NCBI GenBank assembly: GCA_002269645.1
Contig: NIVC01004069.1
Location: 1 to 61,834, forward strand
Reading direction: 5' to 3'
DNA from: Macrostomum lignano
Lineage: Eukaryota
Length of the DNA: 61,834 bases
Shown here: positions 14,724 through 43,199 of the stretch, piece by piece
Layout of the letters: each line of letters opens with the position of its first letter
Numbering within the stretch: position 1 is the stretch's first letter
Translations under genes and position numbers: made by a program
The notes under the pieces: generated by a model
What the model was told of the DNA's origin: nothing
The model's database searches: none
Seen by the model: only the letters and a program-made list of their open reading frames with translations

Positions 14724-14773
<50 letters not shown>

Positions 14774-14827
14774 GCCTTGGTGTCTGTCTGTCTGTCTGCC
14801 TGTCTGTTTGTCTGTCTGCCTGTCTGC

Positions 14828-14882
<55 letters not shown>

Positions 14883-14978
14883 CCTGTCTGTTTGTCTGTC
14901 TGCCTGTCTGCCTTGGTGTCTGTCTGTCTGTCTGTTTGTCCGTCTGTCTGTCTGTCTGCCTTGGTGTAGGTCTGTCTG

Positions 14979-15011
<33 letters not shown>

Positions 15012-15032
15012 GCCTTGGTGTAGGTCTGTCTG

Positions 15033-15070
<38 letters not shown>

Positions 15071-15072
15071 CC

Positions 15073-15111
<39 letters not shown>

Positions 15112-18100
15112 ATGTCTGCATATCAGTCTGTCTTTCTGTCTGTCAGTCTGCCTTAGTGCCTGTATGTCTATCTATCCATCTATTTTTTTAAACCTACAGG
15201 ACGCCATGGAGATGAACAAATTAAACGTATTTCACTGGCACATTGTGGACGATCAGTCGTTTCCCTATCAGAGTGTGGTATTTCCTAAGCTATCTGAGAA
15301 GGTAAAGAATCGCTTTAAAGTGTTTTTTACTATGCTTTAATTATTTGTTTAATCTAAACAACATTTTTTAACACAGGGCGCATATGATAGTAATAGCATT
15401 TACTCATTATCCAATATTCGAGAGATAATTGAGTACGCCAGAGTTCGGGGCATTCGAGTTATACCCGAGTTTGACACGCCTGGTAAGTCATGCCGAACTT
15501 TGGTTTGATAAATGCTATGAAAATCCTTCCGGCTGAAGCAAATACCTTTACCCCAGATGTTCACACACTGGCCATAGAATAAACCCCTCTACCCCAGATG
15601 TACACACTGGCCATAGAATACAACCCCCTCTACCCCAGATGTACACACTGGCCATAGAATACAACCCCCTCTATCCCAGATGTACACACTGGTCATAGAA
15701 TACAACCCCCTCTACCCCAGATGTACACACTGGCCATAGAATACAACCCCTCTACCCCAGATGTTCACACTGGCCATAGAATAAACCCCTCTACCCCAGA
15801 TGTTCACACTGGCCATAGAATAAACCCATCTACCCCAGATGTACACACTGGTCATAGAATACAACCCCCTCTACCCCAGATGTTCACACACTGGCCATAG
15901 AATAAACCCCTCTACCCCAGATGTACACACTGGCCATAGAATACAACCCCCTCTACCCCAGATGTACACACTGGCCATAGAATACAACCCCCTCTATCCC
16001 AGATGTACACACTGGTCATAGAATACAACCCCCTCTACCCCAGATGTACACACTGGCCATAGAATACAACCCCTCTACCCCAGATGTTCACACTGGCCAT
16101 AGAATAAACCCCTCTACCCCAGATGTTCACACTGGCCATAGAATAAACCCATCTACCCCAGATGTACACACTGGTCATAGAATACAACCCCCTCTACCCC
16201 AGATGTACACACTGGCCATAGAATAGACTCCTCTACCCCAGATGTACACACTGGCCATAGAATACAACCCCCTCTACCCCAGATGTACACACTGGCTATA
16301 GAATAAAAACCCCTCTATCCCAGATGTGCACACACTGGCCATAGAATATAACCCCCTCGGCCCAGATGTACACACACTGGCCATAGAATAAAACCCCCTC
16401 ACCCCAGATGTACACACTGGCCATAGAATAAAACCCCCTCACTCCAGATGTACACACACTGGCAATAAAATAGAACCCCTCTACCCCAGATGCACACATA
16501 CTAAGCCTTTACTCAAGACATACACATCCTCAAGTAACTCAAAACCTTTCCATTTAGCTTAAGTTTTCTATCTATATGCTACTAAAAGCAGAAATTAAGA
16601 AACGCCATGCCTGTAAAATTTTCAGCCCACACGCACAGCTGGTCTCTTGGCTATCCGGAAATTTTCACGCAATGCTTCAACTATGCCAACCGCTGGACCG
16701 GTTTCTATGGTCCCATGAATCCGGCATTGAATGCTACCTTCGATTTTCTTAAAAAGTTGTACGCAGAAATTTCTAGCGTATTCAAAGATAATTATATTCA
16801 TCTTGGAGCTGACGAAGTTGGCACCTCTTGTTGGTAAGTGTTTAATGTTTATCTGTTGTACTCGTAGCTTATATCAAACATTAATGTCAAAGCTCTATTA
16901 TCACCTTACAGGGATAATAATCCCATTGTGAATCGAATGCGAGCTGATTTTGGTTTCTCTAGGAGTGATCAGCTGATTGATTATTATTTTCGACGGTAAA
17001 GTTACTTGCTGTGTGGATTTTAGTTAGTTCACACTCCCACTTTTCTTTTATTGAGTATTGTTTACACTGTACCAATACCCACAGATTGCAAAATATCATA
17101 ACATCTTTGAGTGCCGGCAAGTCAAATAGTAACAAACGCGGTTTTATTGTATGGCAAGAGGCTTACGATCACGGTGTTATGGTGAGTTTTGGTGACAAAT
17201 GGCTTCTGATTCGAGTAAATTCGATTCTTTAGTAAATGTTGTGTGTACATCTGGGGTTGCGATGGGGTTTTATTTTATGGCCAGTATGTGCACATCTAGG
17301 GTAGAGGGGGGGGGTTAATTCTATTGCCAGTGTGTGTGCATCTGGGGTAGAGGGGGTTTTATTCTACGGCCAGTGTGTGTAAATCTGTGGTAGAGGGGTT
17401 TTATTCCATGGTCTATGTACATCTGGGGTAGAGGGGTTTTATTCTATGGCCAGTGTGTACATTTGGGGTAGAAGTTTTATTCTATGGCCAGTGTGTGTAC
17501 ATCTGGGGTGAGGGGGGTTATTCTATGGCCAGTGTGTGTACATCTGGGGTAGAGGGGTTTATTCTATGGCCAGTGTGTGTACATCTGGGGTAGGGGAGTT
17601 TTTATCAGAACTATAACTGATTACAATACATTGAAGTGTAGCCAGTTTTGCAGTAAACTACAATAACCATCTTTCTGTTTTCTAAGTTTCAAAAACTTTA
17701 TGGAAATCTAACTTAAAGTTCAATAATACTATTAGTAGTAGTAATAAAATATGTCTTACTTTATTTTTCTCATTTTAGCTAAAGAGAGGCACCATAGTGC
17801 AGGTATGGAAAGGCGAAGCCTCCGATGTAGCCATGGTCGCCCAAGCTGGCTACCGAGTTCTCTACAGCACCTGCTGGTACCTGGACAGGCTAGAGTACGG
17901 TCCTCAGTGGACTAAAATGTACCTGTGCGATCCTATTGCTAATTATGCTGGCACTTATAATGGCGGACCGTTTCAACAGCAGATGCCGCAGCAGCAGCCG
18001 CCACCTCAGCAGCAACAGCAGCAGCAGCCACCGCCGCCTTCTTGGATGGCCAACGTTCTTGGCGGTGAAGCCTGCATGTGGAACGAATACCAAGACGATA

Positions 18101-24100: not shown

Positions 24101-26576
24101 CCTATTGAATCCCACACCCCATCCTATTGAATCCCACACCCATTCTATTGAATCCCACACCACATCCTATTGAATCCCACACCACATGCTATTGAATCCC
24201 ACATCCATTCTATTGAATTCCACACCCCACCTTATTGAATCCCACACCCATCCTATTGAATCCCACACCACATCCTATTGAATCCCACACCACATCCTAT
24301 TGAATCCCACACTACATCCTATTGAATCCCACACTACATCCTATTGAATCCCACAATTTATCATATTGAATCCCACACGAATCCTATTGAATCCCACACC
24401 AATCCTGATGAAATACCACAACTAAAACCCATAGCTCGTAAATGCTACATCTTAAACCCCAGAAACTCCGCACCACATGATCATTTAGAATCAGATTTCA
24501 GCCTAAAGTCCGCAACGGCTCCAATTACACTTACAAACCCTGTTCATAAAGCTGGGCTACAAGCTTCACACATTCACCCCCGTGTCCCACCAATCCAACA
24601 GGCCTCTCGCTTCCGCAGTAGCTGAGCGTCTCTGGAGCTCACCGGAGGCCACTCGCGACCTGCTAGCCGCTGGGCGCCGTATCGAAGAGCAGCGCTGCAG
24701 GATGCGAGCTCGCGGCATCCCGGTCGGCGTAGCCAGCGGCCCCGGCTCTTGTCGGCCGCCGCCACCTGCCGGCAACAGATCAAGGAATAAGCTTCCAAAA
24801 AGGAATAGAAAAATTCCAAAACTAGAGAAACAGTCGCTAACAAATCGAATGGTTGGCGTTAAGCAAACGGCGGCTCCTTTGTCTGCTACTGGGTCTGGCT
24901 CCTCGAAAATTGACAGCGATTATGCGGACTCCGATCACGACTTGTCGTTTCGTCGAGCCCTTGTTAAACGTCGAGGGCCCCAGCAGCAGCATCGAGATAA
25001 GGTAAAATCAAAATCAGTAGTGTCAAAATCAAAATCATTATTGTCAAAATCAAAATCAGTAATGTCAAAATCTAAATCAGTAATGTCAAAATCTAAATCA
25101 GTAATGTCAAAATCTAAATCAGTAATGTCAAAATCAAAATCAGTAATGTCAAAATCTAAATCAGTAATGTCAAAATCTAAATCAGTAATGTCAAAATCAA
25201 AATCAGTAATGTCAAAATCTAAATCAGTAATGTCAAAATCAAAATCAGTAATGTCAAAATCAAAATCAGTAATGTCAAAATCTAAATCAGTAATGTCAAA
25301 ATCAAAATCAGTAATGTCAAAATCAAAATCAGTAATGTCAAAATCTAAATCAGTAATGTCAAAATCAAAATCAGTAATGTCAAAATCAAAATCAGTAATG
25401 TCAAAATCAAAATCAGTAATCTCAAAATCAAAATCAGTAATGTCAAAATCAAAATCAGTAATGTCAAAATCTAAATCAGTAGTGTCAAAATCAAAATCAG
25501 TAATGTCAAAATCAAAATCAGTAATGTCAAAATCTAAATCAGTAATGTCAAAATCAAAATCAGTAATGTCAAAATCAAAATCAGTAATGCCAAAATCAAA
25601 ATCAGTAATGTCAAAATCTAAATCAGTAATGTCAAAATCAAAATCAGTAATGTCAAAATCAAAATCAGTTATGTCAAAATCTAAATCAGTAATGTCAAAA
25701 TCAAAATCAGTAATCTCAAAATCTAAATCAGTAATGCCAAAATCAAAATCAGTAATGTCAAAATCAAAATCAGTAATGTCAAAATCAAAATCAGTAATCT
25801 CAAAATCAAAATCAGTAATGTCAAAATCAAAATCAGTAATGTCAAAATCAAAATCAGTAATGTCAAAATCAAAATCAGTAATGCCAAAATCAAAATCAGT
25901 AATCTCAAAATCTAAATCAGTAATCTCAAAATCAAAATCAATAGTCTTAAAATTAAAATCAGTAATGTCAAAATCAAATTCATTCATGTCAAAAATCAAA
26001 ATCAGTAGTTTCAAGATCAGTAATGTCAAAATCAAAATCAGTAATGTCAAAATCAAAATCAGTAATGTCAAAATCAAAATCAGTAATGCCAAAATCAAAA
26101 TCAGTAATCTCAAAATCTAAATCAGTAATGTCAAAATCAAAATCAGTAATGTCAAAATCAAAATCAGTAATGCCAAAATCAAAATCAGTAATGTCAAAAT
26201 CTAAATCAGTAGTGTCAAAATCAAAATCAGTAATTTCAAAATAAAAAATCAAATGCAGGTTCCAATCGCAGAGTATCAACATCGAAATAGGATTTACGCG
26301 ATTTCCAAGAGCCAGCATCATCAACACCCGGTGGCTCTGTTCCTAGCCCTGGTGCTGGCAGCTCTGGCTCTGTTCCTGGTGCTGTCCAGAGCGGTGTTCG
26401 TGCTGAGAATCACCCGCTACGGTGGCAGCACCGCAGGTTTGGAGTCGGCCGGCTCCACCGAGGGCAAGGCTGCATGGCTTCTGTGGCCCTGGCTGCGGCC
26501 CCGGCGACTCCTGCTGTGTCTGGCCATTGCCGCGGCTTGCAATGTGCTGGTCTGGCTCTGGACTTCTATGGTCTGA
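12134..26576 (+). CDS. HEXB: Beta-hexosaminidase (GH20, HEXA/HEXB-like), 844 aa, with signal peptide and a C-terminal hydrophobic extension; exons 12134-12223, 12852-13413, 13949-14061, 14142-14252, 15200-15301, 15377-15482, 16626-16833, 16912-16995, 17085-17181, 17779-18122, 24602-25001, 26259-26576
   Basis: All junctions are GT-AG and phases sum to 2535 nt with no internal stop. GH20 motifs: [69 protein letters not shown] (catalytic D-E), [28 protein letters not shown]. The exon 2 acceptor (12852 vs 12855) is a NAGNAG ambiguity. The HEXA vs HEXB distinction cannot be resolved here. Confidence 0.92.
12265..12780. repeat. 33-bp then ~36-bp minisatellites in hexosaminidase intron 1
   Basis: Units tcagattctcaacctgagattctcatctcagtg and aaggctaaagagtctcactatgagattatt(atc). 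Confidence 0.9.
13490..13735. repeat. CT-rich low-complexity tract in hexosaminidase intron 2
   Basis: Imperfect ctctc/ctact repeats. Confidence 0.85.
14277..15180. repeat. (TGTC)n microsatellite in hexosaminidase intron 4
   Basis: ~900 bp of tgtc with interspersed tgccttggtg variants. Confidence 0.97.
15545..16500 (+). repeat. ~40-bp minisatellite in hexosaminidase intron 6 (ctaccccagatgtacacactggccatagaatacaaccccct)
   Basis: Tandem units read directly. Confidence 0.95.
17241..17600 (-). repeat. Same ~40-bp minisatellite in inverted orientation, hexosaminidase intron 9
   Basis: Units gtgtacatctggggtagaggggtttattctatggccagtgt are the reverse complement of the intron 6 units. Confidence 0.92.
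18170..19118. repeat. 22-bp minisatellite (attgaatcccacaccacatcct), left part, hexosaminidase intron 10
   Basis: Tandem units; the same array resumes at 24063. Confidence 0.95.
19120..24062 (-). mobile_element. Internally deleted EnSpm/CACTA-type element inserted in the intron 10 minisatellite
   Basis: Spliced transposase 5' part: [50 protein letters not shown] (22009-22480), truncated at the first DG motif. TCCGG/CCGGA subterminal motifs are dense at both ends (19130-19430 and 23685-24040). No clean TIR pair was found. Confidence 0.7.
24063..24410. repeat. 22-bp minisatellite, right part of the intron 10 array
   Basis: Same unit as 18170-19118. Confidence 0.93.
25003..26250. repeat. 21-bp minisatellite filling hexosaminidase intron 11 (gtcaaaatcaaaatcagtaat)
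   Basis: Begins at the donor AAG|gtaaaa (25002) and ends before the acceptor aaatgcag (26258); source of the (SKSKSVM)n and (DFDITDF)n ORFs. Confidence 0.95.
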
Positions 26577-27593
26577 TCTTGAGCTTATTTTCGTCAGCTG
26601 TTTCACTTCTGTAAATGCTTTTGGCTCTTTCTGTATTGTCCACTCTACTCTATCTGCTCCCTACTCTATCTACTCCCTACTCTGTCCACTCTACTCTATC
26701 TGCTCCCTACTCTGTCAACCTCTAGTTTCCAATACTTCCGTCTCGTCGTCACTGCTGTTTCTAGCTCATCTGTCCACTCCTGCTTGCATCCCCTGTGCAG
26801 CATAATTTCCATGTTGATCTCGCTGTGGCACACGCTTTTTTCTAGCAAGTAGTTTGACCTGTCTTACCCTTTCCCTCAGTCGATCTCATCTTTATCTAGT
26901 ATGCTGCTGTTTTACGTTTCAATTTTGCTAATTTTACTATTCAATTTTGCACCGTCAAAATAGTCAGGTTATGAATGTAACTTTAAACATAACAACTTGT
27001 GCCTAACACATTAACTCTGTAATACCAGCAGCTTCCTTATTTGATTTCTGTTTGCTTCTGTTTTCGAATAGTTAGATTCGTTTTAAGCTTTGCTGTACGA
27101 ATAACTATAACTATACGATAACTGCAGTGTCAGTACATAGATAATCACTACATGTGTAACTGACATCGACTCCAATATACATGTAGAAGAAACAGTATTC
27201 TAATCATTGATTATCCAATCTTTTATAAACATTTCTGATAGCACACCCTGTACTTATCAACTTTGTGTCCGGCATTTTACCCTTTAAATGTCCTTAAATC
27301 AGACTTCCCTTTTCCTTTTTCTATCTAATGCAATCGCCGTTATAACAGTTTGTAGTCAGTGCAAGTTTTACCGCTGCGGTTGTTTATAACAAATATCTTG
27401 TAAGAGTATATTTAGTCACATTCTGAAAATGAATAAAAATAAATTAATCTTGTCGTGCATGCTTTTATTACTGAAGATTTACATCAGTTTACAGTTGAGT
27501 GTATTTTTATTCTGGATTTATTATGAAGAAAACAATTGACAAATATAACGCATCTGAAGTGTAAATATAATGATTACATTCAGACTGTGTCCG

Positions 27594-27642
27594 ATCGGGT
27601 CTCAACGAACTATAGAAAGTTTTTCCGTTACGAGACCGTCAT
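27594..27642 (-). promoter_or_regulatory. Type II SECIS element in the selenoprotein L 3'UTR
   Basis: mRNA sense: AUGAC-GGUCUC-GU-AACG-G-AAAAA-CUUUCUAUAG-UU-CGUU-GAGACC-CGAU. It has the AUGA/GA core, helix GGUCUC:GAGACC plus AACG:CGUU, unpaired adenosines and an apical mini-stem (AAC:GUU). It lies on the same strand, downstream of a gene with in-frame TGAs, and upstream of AATAAA at 27511-27506 and 27469-27464. Confidence 0.88.
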
Positions 27643-27739
27643 TAATGCGCTATATATATGTCAACTGCGTGTAATGTAATACATGTAATAAGTATACTAT
27701 TTTGGAATGGCAGAATGGATATTGGTATTTGACTGCAAC

Positions 27740-28100
27740 ATCAACATCTTGTACCGACAGCAGTCCTTTCAAAACATCCTGTACAGACAGCAGTCCTTTC
27801 AAAACATCCTGTACAGACAGCAGTCCTTACAAACATCTTGTACCGACAGCAGTCCTTACAAACATTTTGTACAGACAGCAGTCCTTACAAACATCTTGTA
27901 CCGACAGCAGTCCTTGCAAACATCTTGTACAGACAGCAGTCTTTGCAAACATCTTGTACAGACAGCAGTCCTTACAAACATCTACATGTACAGACAGCAG
28001 TCCTTGCAAACATCTTGTACAAACAGCAATCCTTGCAAACATCTTGTACAATCGGCAGTCCTTACAAACATCCTGTACAGACAGTAGTCCCTACAAACAT
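27740..28100. repeat. ~30-bp minisatellite between the selenoprotein L stop codon and the SECIS (caaacatcttgtacagacagcagtcctta)
   Basis: Tandem units read directly. Confidence 0.92.
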
Positions 28101-28224
28101 ATTTATCCTAGGGCGCGTGTTCTGTACGTCTGTAGTCAATTCTACTAAGTGTTCATATTTTCCGGTAAAATAGCACCAGCATAACATAAAGCGACAAGTT
28201 ATTTAATAAGCTACGCTAGCTACA

Positions 28225-30425
28225 CTACATGTACTCGCGACACTTGGCTAGAATAGTATCAATACTCGGTCGGTCAGTAGACGATCCGCCTGCCTGACTA
28301 AACACAAGCCGACACTCTGCATCACTACCCGATCCGTTATATTCTACTTTCAGTAGAAAATCGCCACCCATCTGCAGCAGATCCTCTGTGTTCACATCGG
28401 CCGGTTTGTCCGTTTTAACACCACAAGCGGACAGTTGGGCGTAGTGATGAAGAGCCGCTACGCCCCAGCTGTTGACAGCGGAACGATTCAAACCAAAGCG
28501 TCGATACAGGTCACGTTCCGGGTCGGCGAAGGCACCTACTGAAGGATCATCGGATGTCTCTGTGCATGTACTATTTGGAGCTTTGTCAACTAGGCAGACG
28601 CGAGTTAACCAGTTGCGGATGACGTCTGGATCGGAAGCGAAGCTGATGAGCAGCGGGCGGCAGTGCGCAGCTTGCAGGCTTGGCTGCGCGGGTGTGTAAG
28701 ATTTGGGTTATTGTAAATAATATATTATCCATGACAGTTAGTCAGTCAACCTGTCACAATCGCAGAGTTAATACGGCATGCAGTGGCGTAACACGGAGGC
28801 GTGATCGGAAAACGAAACTTAAAAAGGCCAACAAGCTAGATTTATGACAAGAAATTAACAAGCCCGGGATAGCGGTAGCCCACCAAGAGGCAGGGGCAGG
28901 GCCCACCAAAAGATGGAGGGCGCCCACCAAAAGACAGGGGCTCCCACTAAGAGACAAAGGGTGTCCGCTAAAAGACAAGGACGTCCACCAAGAGACAGGG
29001 GTGCCCGCTAAAGGACAGGTACTCTAACCAATAGACAGGGGCACCCAGCAAGAGACAGGGGCGCCCACCAAGATCCTTGAGACCCTTAAGTTTGATTAAC
29101 CTTTACCTTGATTACTGACTAATCTCTGGACTGTTTTTACAAAACGACACTTACTCTAAGTGGAGCAACCCATCTCAAGACCCAATTGTCTGGCACAAGT
29201 ATATGCCCCTACCTAGGGCTTTGGGGACGCCTCAGACAAAAATTGAAATACTGTAAACTACTGTATGCATGTGTGGCACCATAGGGTAATAAGTGTGTTT
29301 GTTATAAAGTCATTCAGAAGTAGGTCATTCAGATAACCCAACATCATGCATGAGTATACATTTATAGCAGGAGATATAGTATATGGATGAACCTAAAGAG
29401 GTGCATACATTTTAAAGCTTAGCTGCCAGAAAAATGAAATTGCCATTTTGGGGAACTATGAAAATGATTTGGTATGCAAACTTTCAAAACTAAAAGGCTC
29501 TTAACAATCTCTTAATATAAAACTACTCACAAGCCGCAGCTGCAACTCTGCCGCATGCTGCTGTCATGGATGTCAGGCTAAATGGCGTAGGAAAACTAGC
29601 AAAAGAAATTTCGTTTCTTGGCCAATCAGATCGCTGAGTGGGAGCTGCTGCTTAGTCATTGCACAGACTAGTTGCATTTGAAGGACATCAGTAGCATTGG
29701 ATCCAGGACTTTGAGGTAGCCACTGCTGTAGATATTTTGAATCAAGCTTAGTGAGAAATTCATCCCACGATTCCTATAAAAAATCAAGAAAAATAATCAT
29801 ATAAAAAATTTTGTGAAATTAATATTTTAGTACAATAAAAATGTGGTTACCTCAAATTGCAAAAGATTTTCATATACTTCCTGAACCTCATATTGTGCAA
29901 AATTTGCTTTGAACAGGGAATCTAATTCCTTGAATGAGTTGACACTGCATCTAAAAATTATCATATATATAAAAAAGTTTTTTTATTGATCATTAATATA
30001 TAATGCTATTAATTTTTTCCTAAACTGCAAATATACTTACTGTTTAAGCATAGATGAATATAAGCCAATCAATCTTCCACAAGTCAGCAATCTTTTGTCA
30101 AAGTTTTCTATACTATCATCTGAAAGGTAAATTTAAAAGATAAAAATTAGTAGACATAGAATGTTTGCAGGGTATCAATTTACCTGTGAATAGTTGAAAT
30201 TTTCAGTTTCTAACTTAATTTGATCTTCAACTAACGATTTTTAATTATTATATTGGAAACTTATTTTGCCCTTAAATCACCAATTGATAATTAAAAACAG
30301 ACTTTTTGAGAAAACAGCTAACGATTACAAAGGAAGGCTTACTCACCTGCAAAAGTGTCCTTCAATTCAAGCAATACTTTGTTGGCATTTTGAATAAAAC
30401 TACTGACTGCAGAGAGGAAGTCCAT
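28225..30425 (-). CDS. SELENOL: Selenoprotein L (thioredoxin-fold, AhpC/TSA-like), 319 aa, with two Sec (UGA) at codons 153 and 156; exons 30425-30347, 30119-30041, 29950-29851, 29773-29531, 28683-28225
   Basis: All introns are GT-AG, phases 1/2/0/0, total 960 nt. Exon 4 reads LLLVFLRHLA-TGA-CAT-CCA-TGA-QQH (TGA at 29575-29573 and 29566-29564). Flanking motifs ENLLQFEESWDEFL, LLISF, ADPERDLYRRFGL, QMGGDFLL and DRPSID are typical of SelL/peroxiredoxin-like proteins. SECIS is present downstream. Confidence 0.9.
28870..29075. repeat. ~21-bp GC-rich minisatellite in selenoprotein L intron 4 (cccaccaagagacaggggtg-like)
   Basis: Imperfect tandem units. Confidence 0.8.
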
Positions 30426-30904
30426 TGTTCTGAAGATTAAAACTTATATATGGACTATTATGAACACAATAAACTGAATCTAGATTGTGCTAGCTACATG
30501 ATAAAACTGTATCTAAAGAAAAATTGGAGGCAGAAAAGGCGGCGCAAAAAATATAATACTATTTCGTTGAATCAATTTGAACGAAAAATGACATTAGTAT
30601 TTATAAATTTTTGGACTTTAGACAGTTTAAAGAAAATTTAAATGACGGAAAAGTAAATATTATAATATTAATTGCTTCTTGAAACAGCTATGTAACCACC
30701 AGAACCTGAAAACCATAGACTCATTTGATTAAATAATTCTAAAAAGTGATATCTTTAAAAATCGGAAAGAAACCTAAACATTCACGGAATCGTCCATGAA
30801 CCACTTCACACGTTCAAAGAAGCTATGCCCCCCTCAGCCGATGCCAAAAAATTGGGCCATACTGCTTTGGCCTGTAACTAAATACAGAACAACAGGATAC
30901 GCGT

Positions 30905-33630
30905 TCAGCGTCACAGCTGGCGCGCCTCAGGGTCAGCAGGTCGCGAATGAAACGCTACGTACGCCGCCGGCCGAATCCAGGGCGCCGGCGTCAGCCAGCA
31001 GACAGTCCACGAAACGCAAGTGCGTTTACCAAGGCCACATCATCATTCGCGTCGAGTCGTACTGCCCAACATCTGGTGCAGGAGGTGCTGCTGCAGGCAC
31101 AACAACAACAATTCAGAATACAGTTGCGTCACAGGGCGTACTTCAAGGCCAAGTCACGAATGAACGCCACGCCGCCGGCCGAATCCAAGACGCCGGTGTC
31201 AGTCAGCCCGTGCGCGCCTGCCCCCGCCGGCAGGGTGCCTGCAGCGTTAGCAGCAGCACCTCCTGCGCGCCTCTCTGGGCAGTACGATTCTGTGCTGACG
31301 ATGTGGCCTGCCAGCTGGAGTCGCTGACGGCGCAACAGGTCGCTTGGACGGACCAGGCCGGCGCGATGATACAAAGCCGCGTTGGTCACTCACTCGTAGC
31401 CGATCTTGAAGGCGGCTCGCAGCAGGCCATGCAGCGTGAAACAACAACAACATCGTCAGCGCCCAGGCGATCTCGGCGTTTGTACAGCAAGACGGTGTCG
31501 ATAGATCACTGCCTGGAACAACGCTGCCCTCTGGCGGCCAGGTAGGGCCTCGGACGGCAGGACTGCACTCTCAGAACGAAAGGCAGCCTAGGCAGCCCGC
31601 GGCGACGCCATAAATCTTCGCGGACGCCGGAAACCAAACCGCCAAGGTAGACGAACTGCTGACAACGCGGGGGCTCCATCACCTGTCCATACACGCCCCA
31701 GCACAAAATCACAGCCCCGATGTCATCAGAGACGAGCACGACAGTTTTCTGCGTGTTGACCACCAGGCGACACTTGCCGCATCATCAACTATAGATTGTA
31801 CAGTTGTCTTGGCGCCCTCAACAGTTCAGGTCAGCAGGGCGAAATCCTCGGCGCAGCCCAGCACGCTGAGCTGTCTCTCCGGTTGACGTCGACCCACGCG
31901 TCGCCGCAACAGAAAGCGGTCGTCGTTGTGTAGGAAGAGCGGTCCGCAGCACCCAGTCAAGCACCAGAACGAACAGGAACGGAGCAAGCGTATCTCCCTG
32001 AAGCACCCCCGGAGGATGTCTCAAAGAAGTCCGATAGGCCGTTCGGTGTTGAAACAGCAGCTTATCACGGTATCACGGTACATCGACATGATGGCGGAAA
32101 TCAGCTGCTCTGGCCCGTTGTACGCATGGAGCACCTATGGGAGCACAAACCTGACGACCGAGTCGAATGCCTTCTTGAAATTTATGAAGAGAACAATCGA
32201 TCAGGATCGGTGGCGTATCCGCGCCTCCTGGATGACTCGGCGAAGAGCTAGGATCTGCGTCATTATGCCGCGATGGGGCCGGAAGCCGTTCTGCTCAGGA
32301 CGCTGGTACGGATCCAGCACGGGTTGCGACTGCGATAGCAACATCCGGTTAAACAGCCTCGCAGCGCATGCTTCTCTGAAATTGTGAAATTGCGTTGATG
32401 TGCCTCCTCGGTGGGTTCTCTCGATGGTTCTCTCGTTGGGTGCCTCCTCTCCGAAGAGCACTCGGTTCATCACTCTGGCGACCTCGCTGGCTAACACAGT
32501 GGATGCGCCAGCGCCACGATGGGCACCTCATCCGGACCCAGCGCTTTCCCGCGCGGTAACTGTTGGTCGAGCCTCACAATGTCTACTGTGCTGACTAGTG
32601 CTAGGCTGAAAATCTCCTCTTCCAGCAACGGAATATCAGGGCGGCGCGTTGAAAATGGCGGCGAAGAACTCACGCAGCTCGTTCCTGCGCTCGTCGGCAG
32701 AGTCACCCGCCGGGTTTAGCGGAATGCGCCGCTTTCACCCCGTCAGAGCGTTGAAAGCCGACCAGGCCACGCGACCTCTGTCACAACAACCACTGGAGAC
32801 GGCCTGAATGGCGTCATCAACAACAGCCTGCTGGCGCTGCAGATAGACAGCCGCCAAGGCCTCCTCTGCCTCGCGCGTTGGCCGCCTGCTTAAACGAAGT
32901 CCCTTCTTCAGCACTTCCCTCGCTTGCCCAAACGCGGGGTCGTCTTGCCATACCGGCTGCCCCCGCTGGGCCGGTCGCATCAGAGGGACTGCTTGTTCTG
33001 CGGCGGCCCAAACTGAAACACACACAACTCCGCGTACTCGGCACCTCCACGATTGCCACCGAGCGCAGTGATGAAAGCGCTATCAAAGCAACTGTGCGTG
33101 TCGGCGTTCCTGAGCACGCGGTCGTAGCCGCTGCAGCGGACGGTAGAGCGAATCGCGAAGACAAAGGTCGCAGACGACGCGAGGAGTCCATGCTCAGACC
33201 GCATAGCCAGCGGCGTGATGGCGCGGCGGCGCTCGCGGAAGCGCACCAGCACATGATCGAGCTGTGCCTGCCTCCTTGTTGCGTTCCGGCCACGCACACA
33301 TTCTGATGCTTGCGCTTGCAGCCCACAAAAGTTGCGAGTCTGCCCGGTGGCTTGCGGAAGCGGGTGTTGGCCGACACCATTTCCTGCTTCTCTAGAAAAT
33401 CCTCCAGCGCTCTGTTGCTGCCGTTCTCACCTGGAGTGACGAACGGTGACCGCTAAGACCTCATTAGCGGTTAGCGTTAGCGGTTCGCGTTCAGGTCTCC
33501 GAGGATGATCACTGTGTCACACTGCAACGTTTGCCTCCACCTGTACCGAAAGCTGCTCGAAGAAGTCCTTAGCCTCATCAGGACAGGTGGCGGGGGGCGC
33601 ATACACACAGAACCGGCGAACGTTTGTTAC
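30905..33630 (-). mobile_element. 5'-truncated, frameshifted RTE-clade non-LTR retrotransposon
   Basis: APE motif VIILGDLNA (~33490-33520), GKALGPDEVP, EQNGFRPHRG..QILALRR, GVLQGDTLAPFLF, YAED in place of YADD, YLG, and LQLAGHI. Confidence 0.85.
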
Positions 33631-33939
33631 AATTACTTGACTTGTGACTATATGCAAGGTAATATTGGGTTGTAGTGCTTGGTAGTATAGCTTGTCCCTC
33701 CCCCTTCAAAATTTTTCTGGATCTGGAGTGTTCTGGGGAGCTCAAGGACGAAAATGCCCTTGAAGTGAAGCTTGAAAAAAAGTGAAGCTTGCAGACAAAT
33801 CCCTGAGACTTTATTGCATTAAATATGATTCTTTTACTAACCAGTCAGTAGCCTTGGACCAAACACTTGCTTCTACCGTCGGAAAACTGCTCACCCGAAA
33901 TTTCTCGTGCTACAAAAGACTCTCAAAATGTCCAACAAG

Positions 33940-34270
33940 GGCTTTAGCACCAAGGGCTATAGCACCAGGGGCTTTAGCATCAGAGGCTTTAGCACCAGAG
34001 GCTTTAGCACCAGGGGATTTAGCACCAAGGGTTTATCACCACGGGCGCCAGCGGCACAGGGGACGCCAGCGGCACCAGAGGCTTTAGCACCAGGGGCGAC
34101 AGCGGCACCAGGGGCGACAGCGGCACCACGGGCGACAGCAGCACCAGGTGATTTAGCACCAAGGGTTTATCACCAGGGGCTCCAGCGGCACCAGGGAGGC
34201 CAGCGGCACCAGAGGCTTTAGCACCAGGGGCGACAGCGGCACCAGGGGCGACAGCGGCACCAGGGGCGTC
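33940..34270. repeat. GC-rich 18-bp-based tandem repeat (ttagcaccaggggc / gcggcaccaggggcgaca)
   Basis: Tandem units read directly. Confidence 0.85.
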
Positions 34271-34373
34271 ATAACTTTTGCCTCTCCCCCAAGCTACATG
34301 AACGTCTCCTAGTGCTTCACCCCACTTGTTCGCTCTTGACAGTGAAGCAATCACGTGTGACCTACAATTGTCA

Positions 34374-36090
34374 CTTTGACTTACTTTTCTTAGCTGCAGG
34401 GCGGTCCGAAGACGCAGCGGGGAGGCGAGCGTCGCCCATTCCGCTAATCCCTGAAAGACCCGCTTAGGCTAGGGCGCGGGGCCGGTCAGGGAGGTCTGCC
34501 GGTCCTGTCTGCAGCGTTGTCTTCGGTGGGGAAGACGGAGGCTCGCTCGGTGGCCCGGAAGAACCGGATGAGCCGTGGGATGTTCTCGGGCCGGCAAACG
34601 TCGTCCAGGGACGGGTTGGGCCCGAGGTGGTTGAGCCGGTCTCGGTTGAAGGCCGGGCAGTAGCAGACGAAGTGCTTGGCGTCTTCGTTCTCGAGGTTGC
34701 AGAAAGGGCAGAGTTCGCTCCGGCGGGCACTTCGGAGGAAACAATGCCTTGCAAAGCAACCGTGACCTGTGAAGGTCATAGTGAGAGCGCGGATATCTTT
34801 TCGATTTTGGTTCAAAAGGATTCTCCGCAGCTTGAGGGACGGATTGGGCACTGCCGCACGAGATTGGCGGCAGTTGGAGATACCATCCCATCTGCGCAAG
34901 TGTAGGATGTCCGCCCAGTCGTTAATCTGACGATTGATGACTGTGGCGGGGATGGGGGCCAGGGGCACGGGGCCAAGGGGCGAGCCGGAACAGCCTGCCT
35001 TAGCGAGGGAGTCGGCAGAGCTCGTTACCTTTGAAGCCGGCGTGTCCTGGGATCCATGTAAGCCGGACGGTGTTCCTTCGAGCCAGCTTGTTGAGCTGCC
35101 CGATACAGTCGCGGACTGTTCGGGAGTTCGTAGTGGTGTGACACAGGGCCTGCAAAGCGGCCTGGCTGTCAGAGTGGAAGAAAATTCTTCTGTCCTTGAA
35201 ATCCCTGCAGTGGAGCTCAGCTGCACAGGAGCTGATGGCAAGGATTTCGTTCTGGAAGACGCTGGAGAGTCTGCCAGTGTGTTGGGCGTGAGTAGCGATC
35301 ACGCGGCCGTTGATAAGAATGCAGACTCCAAAGCCGGATAAACCGTCTTTGGAGGATCCGTCAGTAAAGCAGTGAACCTCCTGAGGAGCCCAGCTGTCGT
35401 TGGCGTTCTCCCTAGAGGGGATAGTGACTTTGAAGCGTTGATTGAGGGAGCGCGGCTCAGCGTCCGAAAGGACAGCCGCATTCCCACTCTCCTCCAGAAC
35501 TTTAAGGCACAGGTCAGAGTGCGGCAGGAGCTTGCGCTTCGCCATCGCTCTTTGTGGCTTGAAGCTAACGCCAGCCTCGATGAGCCGGCGGGTAGTTTTA
35601 GCAGCCTCGCGACGGACAAAGATGTCCAGAGGCGCGAGGCAAAGAAAGGCGTTGAGGCCGTCAAAGGGAGCAGAGAGCGGGGCATTCAGGATCATGCGGC
35701 ACGCACGTCCCTGCACCTTTTTGAGGGCTTCGTGGCAGGTTTTAATCTGCAAGGCGCTGGTCCAGACCAGGCCGGCGTAAGTAACGGCCGGTCGGACCAT
35801 TGCGGTAAAGATCCACCAGAGCTGTTTCGGGGTGAGGCCCCAGGTGGTGCCGACGGCTCTGCGCAGCTGCGCAAGAATCGCGAGGGCTTTTTTGGTTTTG
35901 GCCTGGACGTGGGTGGACCAGCTCAGCCGATGGTCCAGCGTCACGCCGAGACACTTGGCTTGCTTGCAGGATGGAATTTCCATCCCGTAAAGCTTTAGTG
36001 GGCGAATACGCCAGTTAACCCTGCTGGTGAACATGATCGCGACAGTTTTGGTCTCAGAGAGCCTGAGGCCGCACCTGTCCACCCATTTGT
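34374..36090 (-). mobile_element. 3' half of a Loa/Lian-like (R1 group) LINE: RT C-terminus, RNase H, C-terminal Cys/His knuckle, 3'UTR
   Basis: KCLGVTLD, FTDGS..DSQAAL..WIPGH (RNase H), GHGCF..CPFC..EDAKHFVCYC, and 3' end ..CCTGCAGCTAAG..GTAAGTCAAAG. Frameshifted. Confidence 0.9.
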
Positions 36091-36730
36091 AGTGTGAGCA
36101 TCTTTTGTGTAATTTCTGAATTCTATTAGTTAGTTAGCTTCTGTATTATTGTTGTTAATTATTGTATTTCGCTTTAATTTAGTCCCGTTTTCAATGTACT
36201 TTTTTTCTTGATTAGTTAGAGTTTATTTTGCGTAAACCGGCTAGAAGTCAGAAGCCAACTGTGACTCAGCGGAGGGTTGAGTTTTTCTGCGAACCCCGGC
36301 TTTGCGCGGCCAGCCAATCAGAACCGGCCTGGACCCTGGCACGCGGCAAAATCCGCTTTGAAAATCCGGTTTCGCGCTTTGAGGCGCCTGAGTTCGTCAC
36401 CCCCGGTCCATGTTTTGCTCCCTGCCGGACCGCTTCAGTCTTATAGCGTAACGTCTACGGCAAATTTCTGTCTGAAGTCGTCGCTATTTAGCGCGGTTAG
36501 ATAGAGACTGTCGGATTTGACCAAGTACGCGGCCTCGACCCAGAGGGCCTCAGTGTCACACTGAAGGGCAGCGCTGATAGAACTTAGTCAGTGCTCCATT
36601 GCTCCGTTAGGGATAGGTGACTAGAGGAAAGAGCAGAAACAGACAATCGAGTACGCTCGTAGAAAATGTAGAGGGTTATACATGTTATTTGTTGGTCTGT
36701 ATGGCCAGGGACTCCTGGGCCCACTTCGCG

Positions 36731-40223: not shown

Positions 40224-40556
40224 TCACAAGCTGTCCAGCATTTTCATTGCACTTTCTCGATCAATTTTTTTCAGACAACCGTAAATCAGTTGTGAAGTGC
40301 CGTCTGAAACTTTGCAACCGGACGCAATGCAATTACTCACTTCTTCCAGATTGTCACCGAATTGGAATATACAAGCTCCGTACACTGACTTGATCTCACA
40401 GGTTTCCGAAAGAACACGAGCTGTTTTCCAGCACTTAATATCCATTTCACTTTGCTCGCCAGAACCAGCGACATCCTCGATAGCTGCGGTTCCCATGGAA
40501 ACCAGGGCAAAAATAAGAACGCAAACTTTAAGAATATTTCGGAAACTCTCAGCCAT
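40224..40556 (-). CDS. Small secreted cysteine-rich protein 1 (110 aa, single exon)
   Basis: MAESFRNILKVCVLIFALVSMGTAA resembles a signal peptide. Six mature Cys with spacing C-x10-C-x8-C-x13-C-x4-C-x12-C-LKK. Paralog at 42918-43199. Confidence 0.75.
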   Translation of the reverse strand: MAESFRNILKVCVLIFALVSMGTAAIEDVAGSGEQSEMDIKCWKTARVLSETCEIKSVYGACIFQFGDNLEEVSNCIASGCKVSDGTSQLIYGCLKKIDRESAMKMLDSL

Positions 40557-42917
40557 AGTAATGTTTATCCAATGGGTAGCTTTCAGATGAGATATAACGT
40601 TGCCGATCTGCAACTATAAACTCAGTCAAAGCTTTAGTTGATGGTCTCTGTTTAAATAAAATTATTTTAGCAGTGGAGAGTGCGTGTATGTTTCGAATAT
40701 TTTTGCTAGCTTGAAATTTTTCTTTTCGTTATTCTATTCCATTTTTTCTTAAACTCGATAGAGCAAGCGGCACACAACATTCTAAAATGTTTCATTTGCT
40801 GAAGAGTAGATGTCTAAAAAAGTTTTTAGAATCTAAGTAGCTTGAATATTTTAATTATGAAAGAATTTTTAAGTGATATGCAATTGTCAGTGGAAAGAAT
40901 TTTATTTTAATTTGAATATCATGAGCGCGCCTTCTGTATGGTTAAGAATTTTTAGCATTTTCAATTTTGCTAAATTAAAATTGAAAAAAAATCAATGGTA
41001 TGTGAGGCGAGGCGACTCGATTCGTTTCATGTAGTAAGCCAGACACGAACGATTTCCAAATTTCCCAATTTCAAGCATCAAGTAACGGCTAATGATGCTG
41101 TTTTGTTGAAACTATAGAGTGCAAGTACTTGATAACTTCAGCACATTGCCGTCGGTGTGTTTAAATAATTTACCTTTTAGGGATTCAGTTTTTCATAACT
41201 GCAATCAATTTTGCCCGCAGAACTTCACGACTATATCCATGTCTCATAGCTTCCTGTTACCTTCAACACATTTACCATTTACAAGAGAAACGAACGCTAC
41301 AATCGAACAGCATCGTATGTAAGTACTCAAGTGAGTGGCTAAGGTCTTCATGGATGTCATCACCAAGCAGAAGTGCATTCATTCGGTGAACCATACCCAA
41401 ACGTACATCCAGAGATGTCCAGGGCCTGGTCGACATCTTTGACTGAATGATACATATTCTGAGTACTTTGTCATCGATTGCAGACTCATTTTTACCTCAG
41501 ACTGGTCTAAATGGCATCGCAGTTTTTTTGAAGGAAGTTCGTGAAAAGTTTGCAACTACACCTGTGCTACTGTAGAAAAACGTTTTACTAAAAATCTGTG
41601 CAAGTAGACTAATAGTGTTATAATTTTTATTGCTAGACTTTAGGCAGTAACACTACATGTACACTATAACTATTCTTTTATTGTGAGGATTGCCACAGAG
41701 AGTCTCTGCAAGCGCGAAGTTTCTACAAGGATGATTCCTGCTGCAAAAATATCACTGTTCCAACTATGAATGCCTCTATTGATGTCGATTGATGAGTGAA
41801 ATCAAAAGCGCCTTTTCTACCTAGGAGAATGAAAGACTACTTTAAATTAATTAGTTATTGCATCATAGAGCTCTGCACTAGTAGTTTAGCCTACTAGATT
41901 TAACTAACTTTAACAGAATCAGAACAATAACTTTTGTTCTCTAGCGATAACGTGCTTGACTTTGTCAGATTTTGATTATTTTGCAAAAGGCATGCTTTTA
42001 ACAATCTTTCTGGCCGAAGTAACCGGACCTCATCAAAATACGCCGTAAAATATACCACTCAGCCTATGTCAAGTTCTGCTCATAGTAGTTTCAAACTGTC
42101 CTTGTTAAGCAACTTCCACGACACCTGCCGTCAGCATCGACATTAGCTGTTCAGCTGAGTCGGGCGTCTCCTCAGTGTTCTGCATGGTGGAAAATTTTAA
42201 ATCCACACGGCACAGTCTGCTGTCGCTGTGCCTGGCGCAGAAGTGCGGAGGAGCGCCAGCCGTTATCGAGCGCTGCATCCACTTCTAGTCTATACCAGTT
42301 TATTTCTGCTCTTAAGCTTAAATCTTTCTATTATAGTCATAAAGTCTTATGCAACTTGAAACTTTATGCTGCAATCTTAGTATTGTTTTTTAATTAGTTT
42401 AGTGAAAACTTAAGCTCGACTTGAGCCCGTGCGTGCAACATTTCAACGTCTGCCGATGTACCCGACGTACCCGACGTCACTGGGCATCATTTGACAGCTG
42501 CGTGGATAGATGCCTGTTTGTCTGATTATCAGTTAAATATGAAATAATTGGCTTTAAAAAATTTTACATCAACCTGCAGGCAAATGACTTAAACATTGGT
42601 TTATTTGCTCTTAAAAAGCCAATAAGGAAAAATCTAGCGATCACACTAGCGGAAAAAATACCCAACTCGACAATGCTTTTCGTAAGCTTGTTTCCAGTTC
42701 AAGATTCGAAAAAATACATTTCAGCAAAGTCTTTAAGATTAGTGAGCATGACGTTGCCAGTCAACTTCACTTGCTGCTAATGCGTTGCAAACTTGAACTT
42801 CTCACATGAGTATTATTTGCCAATCACTTATCTTGCGAGACCGTATCAATTTGTTTTATTCAATCGTAACTAGTAAAAAAATCTTGCGAAAGTCAATTGA
42901 AAAGCGCAACTGCAATA

Positions 42918-43199
42918 TCATGGCTTTTTAAGACAACTGACAATCAGCTCGGCCGATCCTCCGCACCTGCCAGCCAGGCAGTTCGCCACCCTGTTGTAGT
43001 CGCCGCTGGATGATGCCGCACAGCCGAAAAGCGAGTTGACCACGCACACTAGAGAGTTGACGCCGGCCAGCTTCATGCAGTAGGTGTCGATGTAGATCCG
43101 CGGTGCATCGTTCTTTGGAGTCGCATCGGCAACAGTCATCGGTCCCAGGGCTACAAGCGCTAGCAGGACTTTCAGATAGCAAAGCTTTGAAATTAACAT
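42918..43199 (-). CDS. Small secreted cysteine-rich protein 2 (93 aa, single exon)
   Basis: MLISKLCYLKVLLALVALGPMTVADA resembles a signal peptide. Cys spacing C-x10-C-x7-C-x13-C-x4-C-x9-C-LKK. Confidence 0.75.
   Translation of the reverse strand: MLISKLCYLKVLLALVALGPMTVADATPKNDAPRIYIDTYCMKLAGVNSLVCVVNSLFGCAASSSGDYNRVANCLAGRCGGSAELIVSCLKKP

What the first reader, a model, noticed from the sequence alone, without database searches (positions are those of the whole stretch)
28225..30425. Hidden selenoprotein L gene with a double-selenocysteine UHPU redox motif
Seen: five minus-strand exons splice in phase to 319 codons. The only internal stops are two TGAs at the thioredoxin CxxC position (LRHLA-U153-HP-U156-QQH), and a SECIS lies downstream. 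The ORF track reports only the last 88 aa, so standard annotation would truncate or miss the gene. Established: SelL is the selenoprotein family with a UxxU motif forming a diselenide bond, described from aquatic organisms. Inference: an intact ortholog with an HP core and an extra Cys-bearing loop (VCLVDKAPNSTCTETSDD). If the host is a flatworm this may extend the known range of the family; I cannot verify that without a search.
Basis: partly seen in the sequence, partly recalled or inferred. Interest (0 to 1): 0.92.

Follow-up and report, generated by a model that had tools for sequence, protein, structure and literature searches.

The report
Selenoprotein L gene in a flatworm
The window holds an apparently intact five-exon gene for selenoprotein L, a known redox protein with two selenocysteines, in the free-living marine flatworm Macrostomum lignano. 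This is an ordinary member of a known family, but it sits in a phylum reported to have lost the family, and public gene models get it wrong.

Summary
Five minus-strand exons with GT..AG borders join in frame to 319 codons. The only internal stops are TGA153 and TGA156 (LRHLA-U-HP-U-QQH).

The interpretation also holds. Seven independent homologous transcripts carry TGA-x-Pro-TGA at exactly these two columns. A profile built from those homologs alone hits only exons 3, 4 and 5 in a six-frame scan of the window, and scores the spliced protein at 193 bits. In a family profile search, the two Sec positions align with the CxxC of prostamide/PGF synthase (PRXL2B) and of ResA/DsbE. A snail protein that NCBI names selenoprotein L matches at 2e-23.

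A SECIS-like hairpin lies 582 nt after the stop (27642-27595), followed by AATAAA. It is the only strict hit in the window, but its helix I is weak and Rfam does not detect it.

The host is Macrostomum lignano: two UniProt models are 97-99% identical over exon 5. Both are chimeras that skip the Sec exon.

The only flatworm selenoproteome survey I found (2013, three species) listed SelL as lost in Platyhelminthes, so this modestly extends the family's range.

Verdict: a new member of a known kind, of moderate-to-low interest.

The parts
30347..30425 (-). Exon 1 (coding part): ATG at 30425-30423, 79 nt, donor GTGAGT
   Evidence: One search gives the splice signals and phase. One search shows an in-frame TAA 7 codons upstream. 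On its own this exon shows only weak similarity to homologues (exons 1-2 score 3.9 bits). It aligns without gaps to HMM positions 9 onward.
30041..30119 (-). Exon 2, 79 nt, acceptor TTTCAG, donor GTAAGT
   Evidence: It is colinear with the homologues' N-terminal helical domain. The support is splice signals plus length, not strong similarity.
29851..29950 (-). Exon 3, 100 nt (CSVNSFKELDSLFKANFAQYEVQEVYENLLQFE)
   Evidence: The homologue-only HMM six-frame scan hits 29958-29851, HMM positions 55-91, E 2.4e-4. The hit ends exactly at the predicted donor.
29531..29773 (-). Exon 4, 243 nt, carrying the redox motif LRHLA-U-HP-U-QQH
   Evidence: HMM scan hit 29770-29531, HMM positions 93-173, E 1e-15 with TGA read through.
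29573..29575 (-). TGA codon 153 = first selenocysteine (context GCC TGA CAT)
   Evidence: It aligns with TGA in L001, L002/L003, L004, L005, L006, L007 and L008. It lies 42 nt upstream of the last exon junction.
29564..29566 (-). TGA codon 156 = second selenocysteine (context CCA TGA CAG)
   Evidence: Same calls as the first TGA. It aligns with the second Cys of the CxxC in PRXL2B, ResA and DsbE.
28225..28683 (-). Exon 5, coding part (152 codons plus TAG at 28227-28225): C-terminal two thirds of the Prx-like2 domain. It includes the lineage-specific insert LVDKAPNSTCTETSDDPS.
   Evidence: HMM scan E 3.4e-23. phmmer against 1.84 billion representatives gave 45 hits. Pfam AhpC-TSA_2 and AhpC-TSA match.
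27500..28224 (-). Inferred 3'UTR (about 705-720 nt). It contains a 29-nt x 12 tandem repeat (27743-28100) and ends after AATAAA at 27522-27517 and 27511-27506.
   Evidence: Sequence reading and TRF. The extent of the UTR is inferred; no transcript was available.
27595..27642 (-). Candidate SECIS: AUGA-C, a 13-nt 5' arm, unpaired AAAA, a 3-bp mini-stem, the 3' arm, then C-GA. It starts 582 nt after the stop and 1085 nt after the first UGA.
   Evidence: My own SECISearch-like scanner. With strict criteria it is the only hit in the whole window on both strands, and 10 of 1000 shuffles of the 3' flank do as well. With lax criteria 46 of 400 shuffles give a hit. Helix I is weak. Rfam does not report it, but it also misses the SECIS of the control mRNA L001.

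Best explanation
This is the Macrostomum lignano orthologue of selenoprotein L (SelL/SELENOL).

The nuclear gene has five coding exons. Its mRNA encodes a 319-residue, ~35.8-kDa protein with two parts:
- an N-terminal helical region of about 125 residues;
- a peroxiredoxin-like-2 (thioredoxin-fold) domain whose CxxC position is occupied by two selenocysteines, U153-H-P-U156.

Both UGA codons would be recoded as Sec by the eukaryotic Sec machinery, directed by a single SECIS hairpin in the 3'UTR. The best candidate for that hairpin is 27642-27595.

By analogy with characterised SelL, the two Sec residues would cycle between a diselenide and two selenols. That would make the protein a redox-active oxidoreductase whose substrate is unknown.

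What is shown here: the gene structure, the homology, the position of both UGAs at conserved Sec codons, and the host species.

What is inferred: actual Sec insertion, the identity of the SECIS, the diselenide chemistry and expression.
For: 1. **Clean gene model.** Five in-phase exons with consensus splice sites, and TGA153/TGA156 as the only internal stops.
2. **Conserved Sec codons.** Seven independent homologous transcripts have in-frame TGA-x-Pro-TGA at exactly the aligned columns. Some end in a poly(A) run. The shared motif is LRH[FL]A-U-x-P-U-[RQ]-x-H.
3. **Unbiased exon recovery.** A homologue-only HMM finds only exons 3, 4 and 5 in a six-frame scan of the whole window.
4. **Full-length colinearity.** The same HMM scores the spliced protein at 193 bits in one ungapped-at-junction domain, HMM 9-297 against residues 4-317.
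5. **Fold.** All 8 family members hit Pfam AhpC-TSA_2 and AhpC-TSA. The family profile hits PDB 9us9 prostamide/PGF synthase at 1.6e-6, with its CxxC on the two Sec columns. ResA and DsbE align their CxPC there too.
6. **Named relative.** BLASTP gives 2e-23 to KAK6997796.1, 'selenoprotein L [Biomphalaria glabrata]'.
7. **Truncated gene calls in homologues.** Calls in other organisms stop at ...LRHFA or restart just after the motif (P0060, P0061, L005-L008). This is the signature of an unrecognised Sec codon.
8. **SECIS candidate.** It has AUGA, a 13-nt arm, unpaired AAAA and GA. It is the only strict hit in 123.6 kb of sequence counting both strands, it is on the right strand, and it lies 582 nt after the stop and about 75 nt before AATAAA. 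The same scanner finds exactly one such element in the 3'UTRs of four homologous mRNAs.
9. **Recoding context.** Both UGAs are followed by C. They lie 42 and 33 nt upstream of the last exon junction.
10. **One SECIS serves both codons in known SelL** (PMC3316567).
Against: - **No transcript, proteomic or 75Se evidence was obtainable.** Exact look-ups of the predicted products found nothing in the 15-billion-protein collection.
- **The SECIS is unconfirmed.** Rfam reports none. Helix I of the candidate is weak, and the 91-nt fold is no more stable than shuffles (z -0.22). My strict thresholds were set after seeing the candidate, and with lax thresholds 11.5% of shuffles give a hit.
- **Exons 1-2 have little homology support of their own** (3.9 bits).
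- **Pfam support for this protein alone is marginal.** The full-length protein scores just below the Pfam cut-offs (25.5 vs 26 and 23.8 vs 27).
- **The Sec machinery of M. lignano was not examined.** The window contains no tRNA gene.
Confidence: 0.85

Rival explanations
1. Decaying or non-recoded gene. The locus descends from SelL, but the UGAs now act as stops. It would then yield only a 152-residue N-terminal fragment or an NMD target, for example because the SECIS has been lost.
For: Rfam finds no SECIS. The candidate has a weak helix I and unremarkable overall stability. A 358-nt tandem repeat has expanded inside the 3'UTR. No expression evidence was obtained. Other flatworms are reported to have lost SelL (PMC3828610).
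Against: The whole 319-codon frame is intact, with no other stop or frameshift across five exons. All family-invariant residues are kept downstream of the UGAs: H159, F182, W192, D221, R224, Y227, the QMGGDF block and DRP. That is not expected if translation ended at codon 153. A second allele or copy (P0001) differs by one conservative change, in the insert loop (the only other mismatch, at the C-terminal residue, is where that gene model splices out the stop codon). Rfam also misses the SECIS of a bona fide homologous mRNA, so its silence carries little weight. A canonical AUGA...AAAA...GA hairpin sits where a SECIS should be.
Confidence: 0.1
2. The public gene models are right. Exon 5 would then be an internal exon of a much larger gene (UniProt A0A1I8IZH1 'protein kinase domain-containing', 993 aa, or A0A1I8FVG9, 3935 aa), and the SelL-like exons 2-4 would be non-coding.
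For: These models exist in UniProt and contain exon 5 at 97-99% identity.
Against: Both models are visibly chimeric.
- P0002 strings together retrotransposon endonuclease, RT and RNase H ORFs of this locus.
- P0002 also reads the start of exon 5 in the wrong frame, seen by comparing the sequence.
- P0001 joins 'MDFLSA' directly to exon 5, and both models splice out the TAG.
- Homologues from other organisms end where this gene's TAG is, and they match exons 3-4, which the models skip.
Confidence: 0.03
3. Sequencing or assembly artefact. The two TGAs would be errors for TGC/TGT (Cys) or TGG.
For: None specific. It is a generic possibility for a single assembly.
Against: Two independent errors would have to fall on exactly the two codons that are TGA in seven unrelated transcripts. 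The public gene models of the same species avoid exon 4, as expected if it contains stops there too.
Confidence: 0.02

Closest known systems
Selenoprotein L (SelL / SELENOL) of fish and aquatic invertebrates (Shchedrina et al. 2007, PNAS 104:13919; described in PMC3316567, PMC3473315, PMC13134290)
   Same: - Two Sec residues two positions apart (UxxU), in a peroxiredoxin-like thioredoxin fold.
- One SECIS candidate in the 3'UTR.
- An aquatic host.
- The same N-terminal extension and the same invariant residues as seven Sec-containing homologues.
- A match to the NCBI-named SelL of Biomphalaria glabrata.
   Different: - The dipeptide between the Sec residues is His-Pro. It is Leu-Pro in six of the seven homologues sampled and Asp-Pro in one.
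- Gln instead of Arg follows the second Sec; one homologue shares this.
- A 16-18-residue insert lies between the conserved W-L...C segment and the DPER motif.
- A second, smaller insert lies in the hairpin after QMGGDF.
- The host phylum is Platyhelminthes, where SelL was reported absent (PMC3828610).
Peroxiredoxin-like 2 proteins (PRXL2A/B/C; prostamide/prostaglandin F synthase, PDB 9us9; Pfam PF13911 AhpC-TSA_2)
   Same: The same domain family. The profile match is 1.6e-6 over about 146 residues, with the CxxC (LRRFGCVVCR) aligned to LRHLAUHPUQ.
   Different: These proteins use cysteine, not selenocysteine. They lack the ~125-residue N-terminal helical region. They lack the QMGGDF and DRP signature as conserved here. 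Sequence similarity is only remote.
Bacterial thiol-disulfide oxidoreductases ResA / DsbE (CcmG), CxPC motif
   Same: Thioredoxin fold. The C-x-P-C aligns column for column with U-x-P-U, including the proline.
   Different: These are only distant relatives (E 4.5e-5 to 7e-4, over the N-terminal half only). They are bacterial, membrane-anchored cytochrome c maturation factors with Cys rather than Sec.

Membership tests
Selenoprotein L (SELENOL) | Two in-frame UGA codons separated by two codons (UxxU) | tested here: met
   TGA at codons 153 and 156, which are the only internal stops of the 319-codon frame.
Selenoprotein L (SELENOL) | Homologues carry Sec (TGA) at both aligned positions | tested here: met
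   Seven transcripts (L001, L002/L003, L004, L005, L006, L007, L008) have TGA-x-CCN-TGA at the same alignment columns.
Selenoprotein L (SELENOL) | Peroxiredoxin-like / thioredoxin-fold domain with the Sec pair at the CxxC position | tested here: met
   Pfam AhpC-TSA scores 26.5 bits (cut-off 26) for the domain alone, and AhpC-TSA_2 scores 25.1 (cut-off 27). All 8 family members hit both families, with best E-values of 2e-15 and 6e-14. The profile against PDB puts the CxxC of PRXL2B, ResA and DsbE on the two Sec columns. No 3D model was made, because the tool refuses spliced sequences.
Selenoprotein L (SELENOL) | Full-length similarity to proteins already named SelL | tested here: met
   BLASTP 2e-23 to KAK6997796.1 'selenoprotein L [Biomphalaria glabrata]', covering both the N-terminal region and the C-terminal domain. 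The score against a homologue-only HMM is 193 bits. No fish SelL sequence was available for direct comparison.
Selenoprotein L (SELENOL) | A single eukaryotic SECIS element in the 3'UTR | tested here: inconclusive
   The candidate at 27642-27595 has AUGA, a 12-bp helix II with a 2-nt bulge, unpaired AAAA and GA. It is the only strict hit in the window, and 1% of shuffles match it. Against this, helix I is weak, 11.5% of shuffles hit under lax criteria, and Rfam is silent. Rfam is also silent on a control mRNA. SECISearch3 was not available.
Selenoprotein L (SELENOL) | The two Sec residues form a diselenide bond | not testable with these tools
   Requires purified protein and mass spectrometry. 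Here it is inferred only from the UxxU spacing at a CxxC site.
Selenoprotein L (SELENOL) | The host has Sec-insertion machinery (tRNA-Sec, SBP2, eEFSec, SPS2 and the rest) | not tested
Other flatworms have Sec-containing TR, GPx and SPS2 (PMC3828610), so the machinery is expected.
Selenoprotein L (SELENOL) | The gene is transcribed and spliced as modelled | not testable with these tools
   No M. lignano transcript could be retrieved, and exact look-ups of five possible called products failed. Junctions 2/3, 3/4 and 4/5 are supported indirectly, by gap-free alignment to homologues across them.

The most novel reading that the evidence does not exclude
This would be the first functional selenoprotein L documented in Platyhelminthes.

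The published inference from planarian, schistosome and tapeworm genomes is that SelL was lost before the flatworm lineages split (PMC3828610). That inference would be wrong. The ancestral flatworm would have kept SelL, it would survive in the early-branching marine Macrostomorpha, and it would have been lost later on the line leading to triclads and parasites.

The M. lignano protein would also be a natural U-H-P-U variant with a lineage-specific loop. M. lignano is a transgenic-capable model animal, so the still-unknown function of the diselenide protein could be tested there genetically.
Probability: 0.55. Interest if true: 0.4.

Novelty: new member of a known kind. Interest (0 to 1): 0.3.

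Why it matters
**Annotation.** Both UniProt models covering this locus (A0A1I8IZH1 and A0A1I8FVG9) are chimeras that skip the Sec-encoding exon. The gene is therefore invisible to anyone using the current M. lignano proteome.

**Evolution.** The only flatworm selenoproteome survey found (Jiang et al. 2013, three species) placed SelL among families lost in the phylum. A retained SelL in Macrostomorpha moves that loss to a later node. It also fits the known association of SelL with aquatic, free-living animals.

**Function.** The biochemical role of SelL is still unknown. M. lignano is a tractable, transparent animal in which transgenesis and RNAi are possible, so it could be used to study a diselenide oxidoreductase in vivo.

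None of this changes what is known about the family's mechanism, so the finding is useful but incremental.

Tried and rejected
- **Rfam search of 26000-31500 at E up to 10.** No SECIS was reported. The same search on a bona fide homologous mRNA (L001) also found none, so Rfam was set aside as insensitive for this element.
- **The search for homologous proteins with the full spliced protein (U replaced by C).** No hit. A search with a five-sequence alignment returned only 3 proteins. The word index is a poor fit for this family.
- Exon 5 alone was used instead.
- **Single-sequence search of PDB.** Only chance hits. The family profile was needed.
- **P0035 contig look-up.** Not on record.
- **Covariance model of SelL SECIS elements.** MAFFT could not align the short hairpins in register, so I dropped it. 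I relied on my own pattern-plus-fold scanner with shuffles and a whole-window control. A second, duplex-energy scanner returned nothing even for a positive control and was discarded.
- **Exact look-up of five possible gene-caller products of the M. lignano mRNA.** None is in the collection, so there is no transcript evidence.
- **The insert loop as an unrecognised intron.** I rejected this. All GT..AG pairs spanning it have lengths that are not multiples of three (52, 56, 61, 64, 71 and 74 nt, from reading the sequence). The frame on both sides is the one that matches the homologues.
- **Lax SECIS-like hits at 39823-39764 and 38430-38335.** They fail the strict criteria and were judged chance.
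- **The original SelL paper (PMC1955791).** Not held.
Full report

Yes. On the minus strand I rebuilt the five exons: 30425-30347, 30119-30041, 29950-29851, 29773-29531 and 28683-28225.
- Every intron begins GT and ends AG, mostly with good consensus (GTGAGT, GTAAGT, TTTCAG, TTTTAG). Intron lengths are 227, 90, 77 and 847 nt.
- The exons sum to 960 nt: 319 codons plus TAG.
- The only internal stops are TGA at codon 153 (29575-29573) and codon 156 (29566-29564), giving LRHLA-U-HP-U-QQH.
- The ATG at 30425 follows an in-frame TAA seven codons upstream.
- The calculated mass with two Sec residues is 35.8 kDa.

**2. Is it more than chance?**

I obtained seven independent homologous transcripts from public assemblies. 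They came from a HMMER search of 1.84 billion representatives with exon 5 and from contig look-ups. From these seven alone I built an HMM and scanned every stop-to-stop fragment of all six frames of the 61.8-kb window, reading TGA through.

Only three fragments scored:

| Exon | Window range | HMM positions | E-value |
|---|---|---|---|
| 5 | 28542-28234 | 204-297 | 3.4e-23 |
| 4 | 29770-29531 | 93-173 | 1e-15 |
| 3 | 29958-29851 | 55-91 | 2.4e-4 |

The hits are consecutive in the model. Their edges fall on the predicted donor sites and within 3 nt of one acceptor. The spliced protein scores 193 bits as a single domain, HMM 9-297 against residues 4-317, with no gap at any exon junction. Exons 1 and 2 score only 3.9 bits by themselves. 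They rest on splice signals, the open frame and the right length.

**3. What is it?**

*Conserved Sec codons.* In all seven homologous transcripts the two columns aligned with TGA153 and TGA156 are themselves in-frame TGA codons. Examples are GCT TGA GAC CCG TGA CGC, GCA TGA TTG CCG TGA CGT and GCA TGA CTT CCA TGA CGA. The shared motif is LRH[F/L]A-U-[L/D]-P-U-[R/Q]-x-H.

Gene callers treated these transcripts in one of two ways. Some translated the TGAs as Trp (P0005, P0016, P0055). Others split the gene into an N-terminal ORF ending ...LRHFA and a C-terminal ORF (P0060, P0061, L005-L008). Both are what happens when Sec codons go unrecognised.

*Fold.* The domain is peroxiredoxin-like. All eight family members hit Pfam AhpC-TSA_2 and AhpC-TSA. 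The M. lignano protein alone sits right at the cut-offs.

*Active-site position.* A family profile searched against PDB finds prostamide/PGF synthase (PRXL2B, 9us9) at 1.6e-6. Its LRRFGCVVCR lies on LRHfAClPCr. It also finds ResA and DsbE, with their C-x-P-C on the same columns. So the two Sec residues occupy the thioredoxin-fold CxxC position.

*Named relative.* The cluster of one distant hit contains KAK6997796.1, which NCBI names 'selenoprotein L [Biomphalaria glabrata]'. It matches the window protein at 2e-23 across both the N-terminal helical region and the C-terminal domain. That snail model itself lacks the Sec exon.

I therefore file the gene as SelL.

**4. SECIS**

Rfam reports none in 26000-31500. 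It also reports none in L001, a polyadenylated SelL mRNA with both TGAs, so its silence carries little weight.

I wrote a SECISearch-like scanner. It requires AUGA, then helix II starting within 1-3 nt on both sides, then unpaired AA 10-16 nt downstream, then GA. It found one element in the 3' flank, at 27642-27595: AUGA-C-GGUCUCGUAACGG-AAAA-...-UUCGUUGAGACC-C-GA, starting 582 nt after the TAG. The same scanner finds exactly one element in the 3'UTRs of L001, L002, L004 and L007. All have an AUGA or GUGA core followed by an 11-13-nt arm and AAA(A).

Controls:
- With lax criteria, 46 of 400 dinucleotide shuffles of the 725-nt flank give a hit, and the whole window gives 9 hits, 5 of them in one tandem repeat.
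- With stricter criteria, 10 of 1000 shuffles give a hit, and the candidate is the only hit in the window on either strand. These thresholds were chosen after seeing the candidate, which biases the test in its favour.
- Helix I is weak. It adds about -2.6 kcal/mol under constraint, and the 91-nt fold has z = -0.22.

AATAAA follows at 27522-27517 and at 27511-27506. I rate the SECIS as probable, not proven.

**5. Host and public annotation**

Exon 5 is 99% identical to UniRef A0A1I8IZH1 and 97% identical to A0A1I8FVG9. Both are from Macrostomum lignano, in Platyhelminthes, Rhabditophora, Macrostomorpha. From my own background knowledge, this is a free-living marine flatworm.

Both models are chimeras:
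- One joins 'MDFLSA' of exon 1 directly to exon 5 and then splices out the stop.
- The other strings together retrotransposon ORFs of this same locus, reads the start of exon 5 in the wrong frame, and removes part of it as a 74-nt intron.

Neither contains exon 4.

**6. How it most likely works**

*Shown:* an intact reading frame with two UGAs at conserved Sec positions of a thioredoxin-fold CxxC site.

*Inferred from the family literature:* both UGAs are decoded as Sec with one SECIS (PMC3316567), and the two Sec residues can form a diselenide (PMC13134290; the original report, Shchedrina et al. 2007, was not held).

Both UGAs are followed by C. They lie 42 and 33 nt upstream of the last exon junction. 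Under the mammalian 50-55-nt rule that position would spare the mRNA from nonsense-mediated decay. This last point is my inference and is untested in flatworms.

**7. What is particular to this copy**

- His-Pro lies between the Sec residues. Six of seven homologues have Leu-Pro and one has Asp-Pro.
- Gln follows the second Sec, as in one homologue.
- A 16-18-residue insert (LVDKAPNSTCTETSDDPS) follows the segment IRNWLTRVC.
- A shorter insert lies in the hairpin after QMGGDF.

The insert loop is coding rather than an intron. No GT..AG pair across it has a length divisible by three (sequence reading), and the same frame matches the homologues on both sides. One allele or copy has Thr for Ala in the loop.

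**8. Comparison with what is known, and novelty**

SelL is established in fish and in sponge, Trichoplax, Nematostella, Capitella and amphioxus (PMC3473315). It was lost in tetrapods (PMC3316567; PMC13134290).

For flatworms, the only survey I found covered S. mediterranea, S. japonicum and T. solium (PMC3828610). It lists SelL among families 'lost in platyhelminthes'. Three further full-text searches found no report of SelL in a flatworm or in Macrostomum.

So this is a new member of a known family. It modestly extends the family's taxonomic range and corrects two public gene models. It does not reveal new biology of the family.

**9. Limits**

- No transcript or protein evidence could be retrieved.
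- The Sec machinery of the host was not examined. The window has no tRNA gene.
- No 3D model was made, because the structure tool refuses spliced sequences.
- No fish SelL sequence was at hand for a direct comparison.

Noticed in passing
window 31900-36100, 44200-49100, 51900-53800 (minus strand): Several copies or fragments of a GC-rich (56-63%) non-LTR retrotransposon. Pfam assigns an APE-type endonuclease (45990-47213, 51907-52530), a reverse transcriptase (45467-46213) and an RNase H (35003-36082). They lie upstream of the SelL gene on the same strand and are fused into the UniProt model A0A1I8FVG9.
   Followed up: partly
window 12930-13421, ~15190-15300, 24582-24800 (plus strand): Exon fragments of a GH20 beta-hexosaminidase gene (Glyco_hydro_20 at 1.2e-11; Glycohydro_20b2 weak). 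Long tandem arrays separate them and mimic ORFs on both strands: 14264-15156 ('CLSV' repeats) and 24935-26113 ('SKSKSVM' repeats). The gene converges on the 3' end of SelL.
   Followed up: partly
window 27743-28100 and 28878-29073: A 29-nt x 12.2 tandem repeat lies inside the SelL 3'UTR, between the stop codon and the SECIS candidate. A 20-nt x 9.6 GC-rich repeat lies inside intron 4. Copy number could differ between alleles and would change the UGA-to-SECIS distance.
   Followed up: no
P0001 = UniRef A0A1I8IZH1; P0002 = UniRef A0A1I8FVG9 (Macrostomum lignano): Both public protein models covering this locus are chimeras. They combine transposon ORFs, SelL exon 5 and, in A0A1I8IZH1, the first six codons of exon 1, and downstream exons (for example 26580-26400). 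Exons 2-4 are skipped and the TAG is spliced out. The NCBI 'selenoprotein L' model of Biomphalaria glabrata (KAK6997796.1) likewise lacks the UxxU exon.
   Followed up: yes
window 39823-39764 and 38430-38335 (minus strand): Two further hairpins passed the lax SECIS-like scan (AUGA...AA...GA) but failed the stricter one. By eye, the second lies in an ORF that resembles a transposase remnant; I did not test this. They are probably chance matches, and no selenoprotein-like frame was seen upstream.
   Followed up: partly
window 40227-40613 and 42918-43199 (minus strand): Two small Cys-rich ORFs of 93-129 aa that look like possible secreted proteins. They have no Pfam match, and both also appear inside the chimeric UniProt model A0A1I8FVG9. 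They may be exons of an unannotated gene family.
   Followed up: no
L005-L008 and P0060/P0061 (homologous transcripts from public assemblies): In automated gene calls, SelL mRNAs are systematically either split into two ORFs at the UxxU motif or translated with TGA as Trp. The family is therefore largely hidden or mis-spelled in the large protein collections. Word-indexed searches with the correct sequence found almost nothing.
   Followed up: partly
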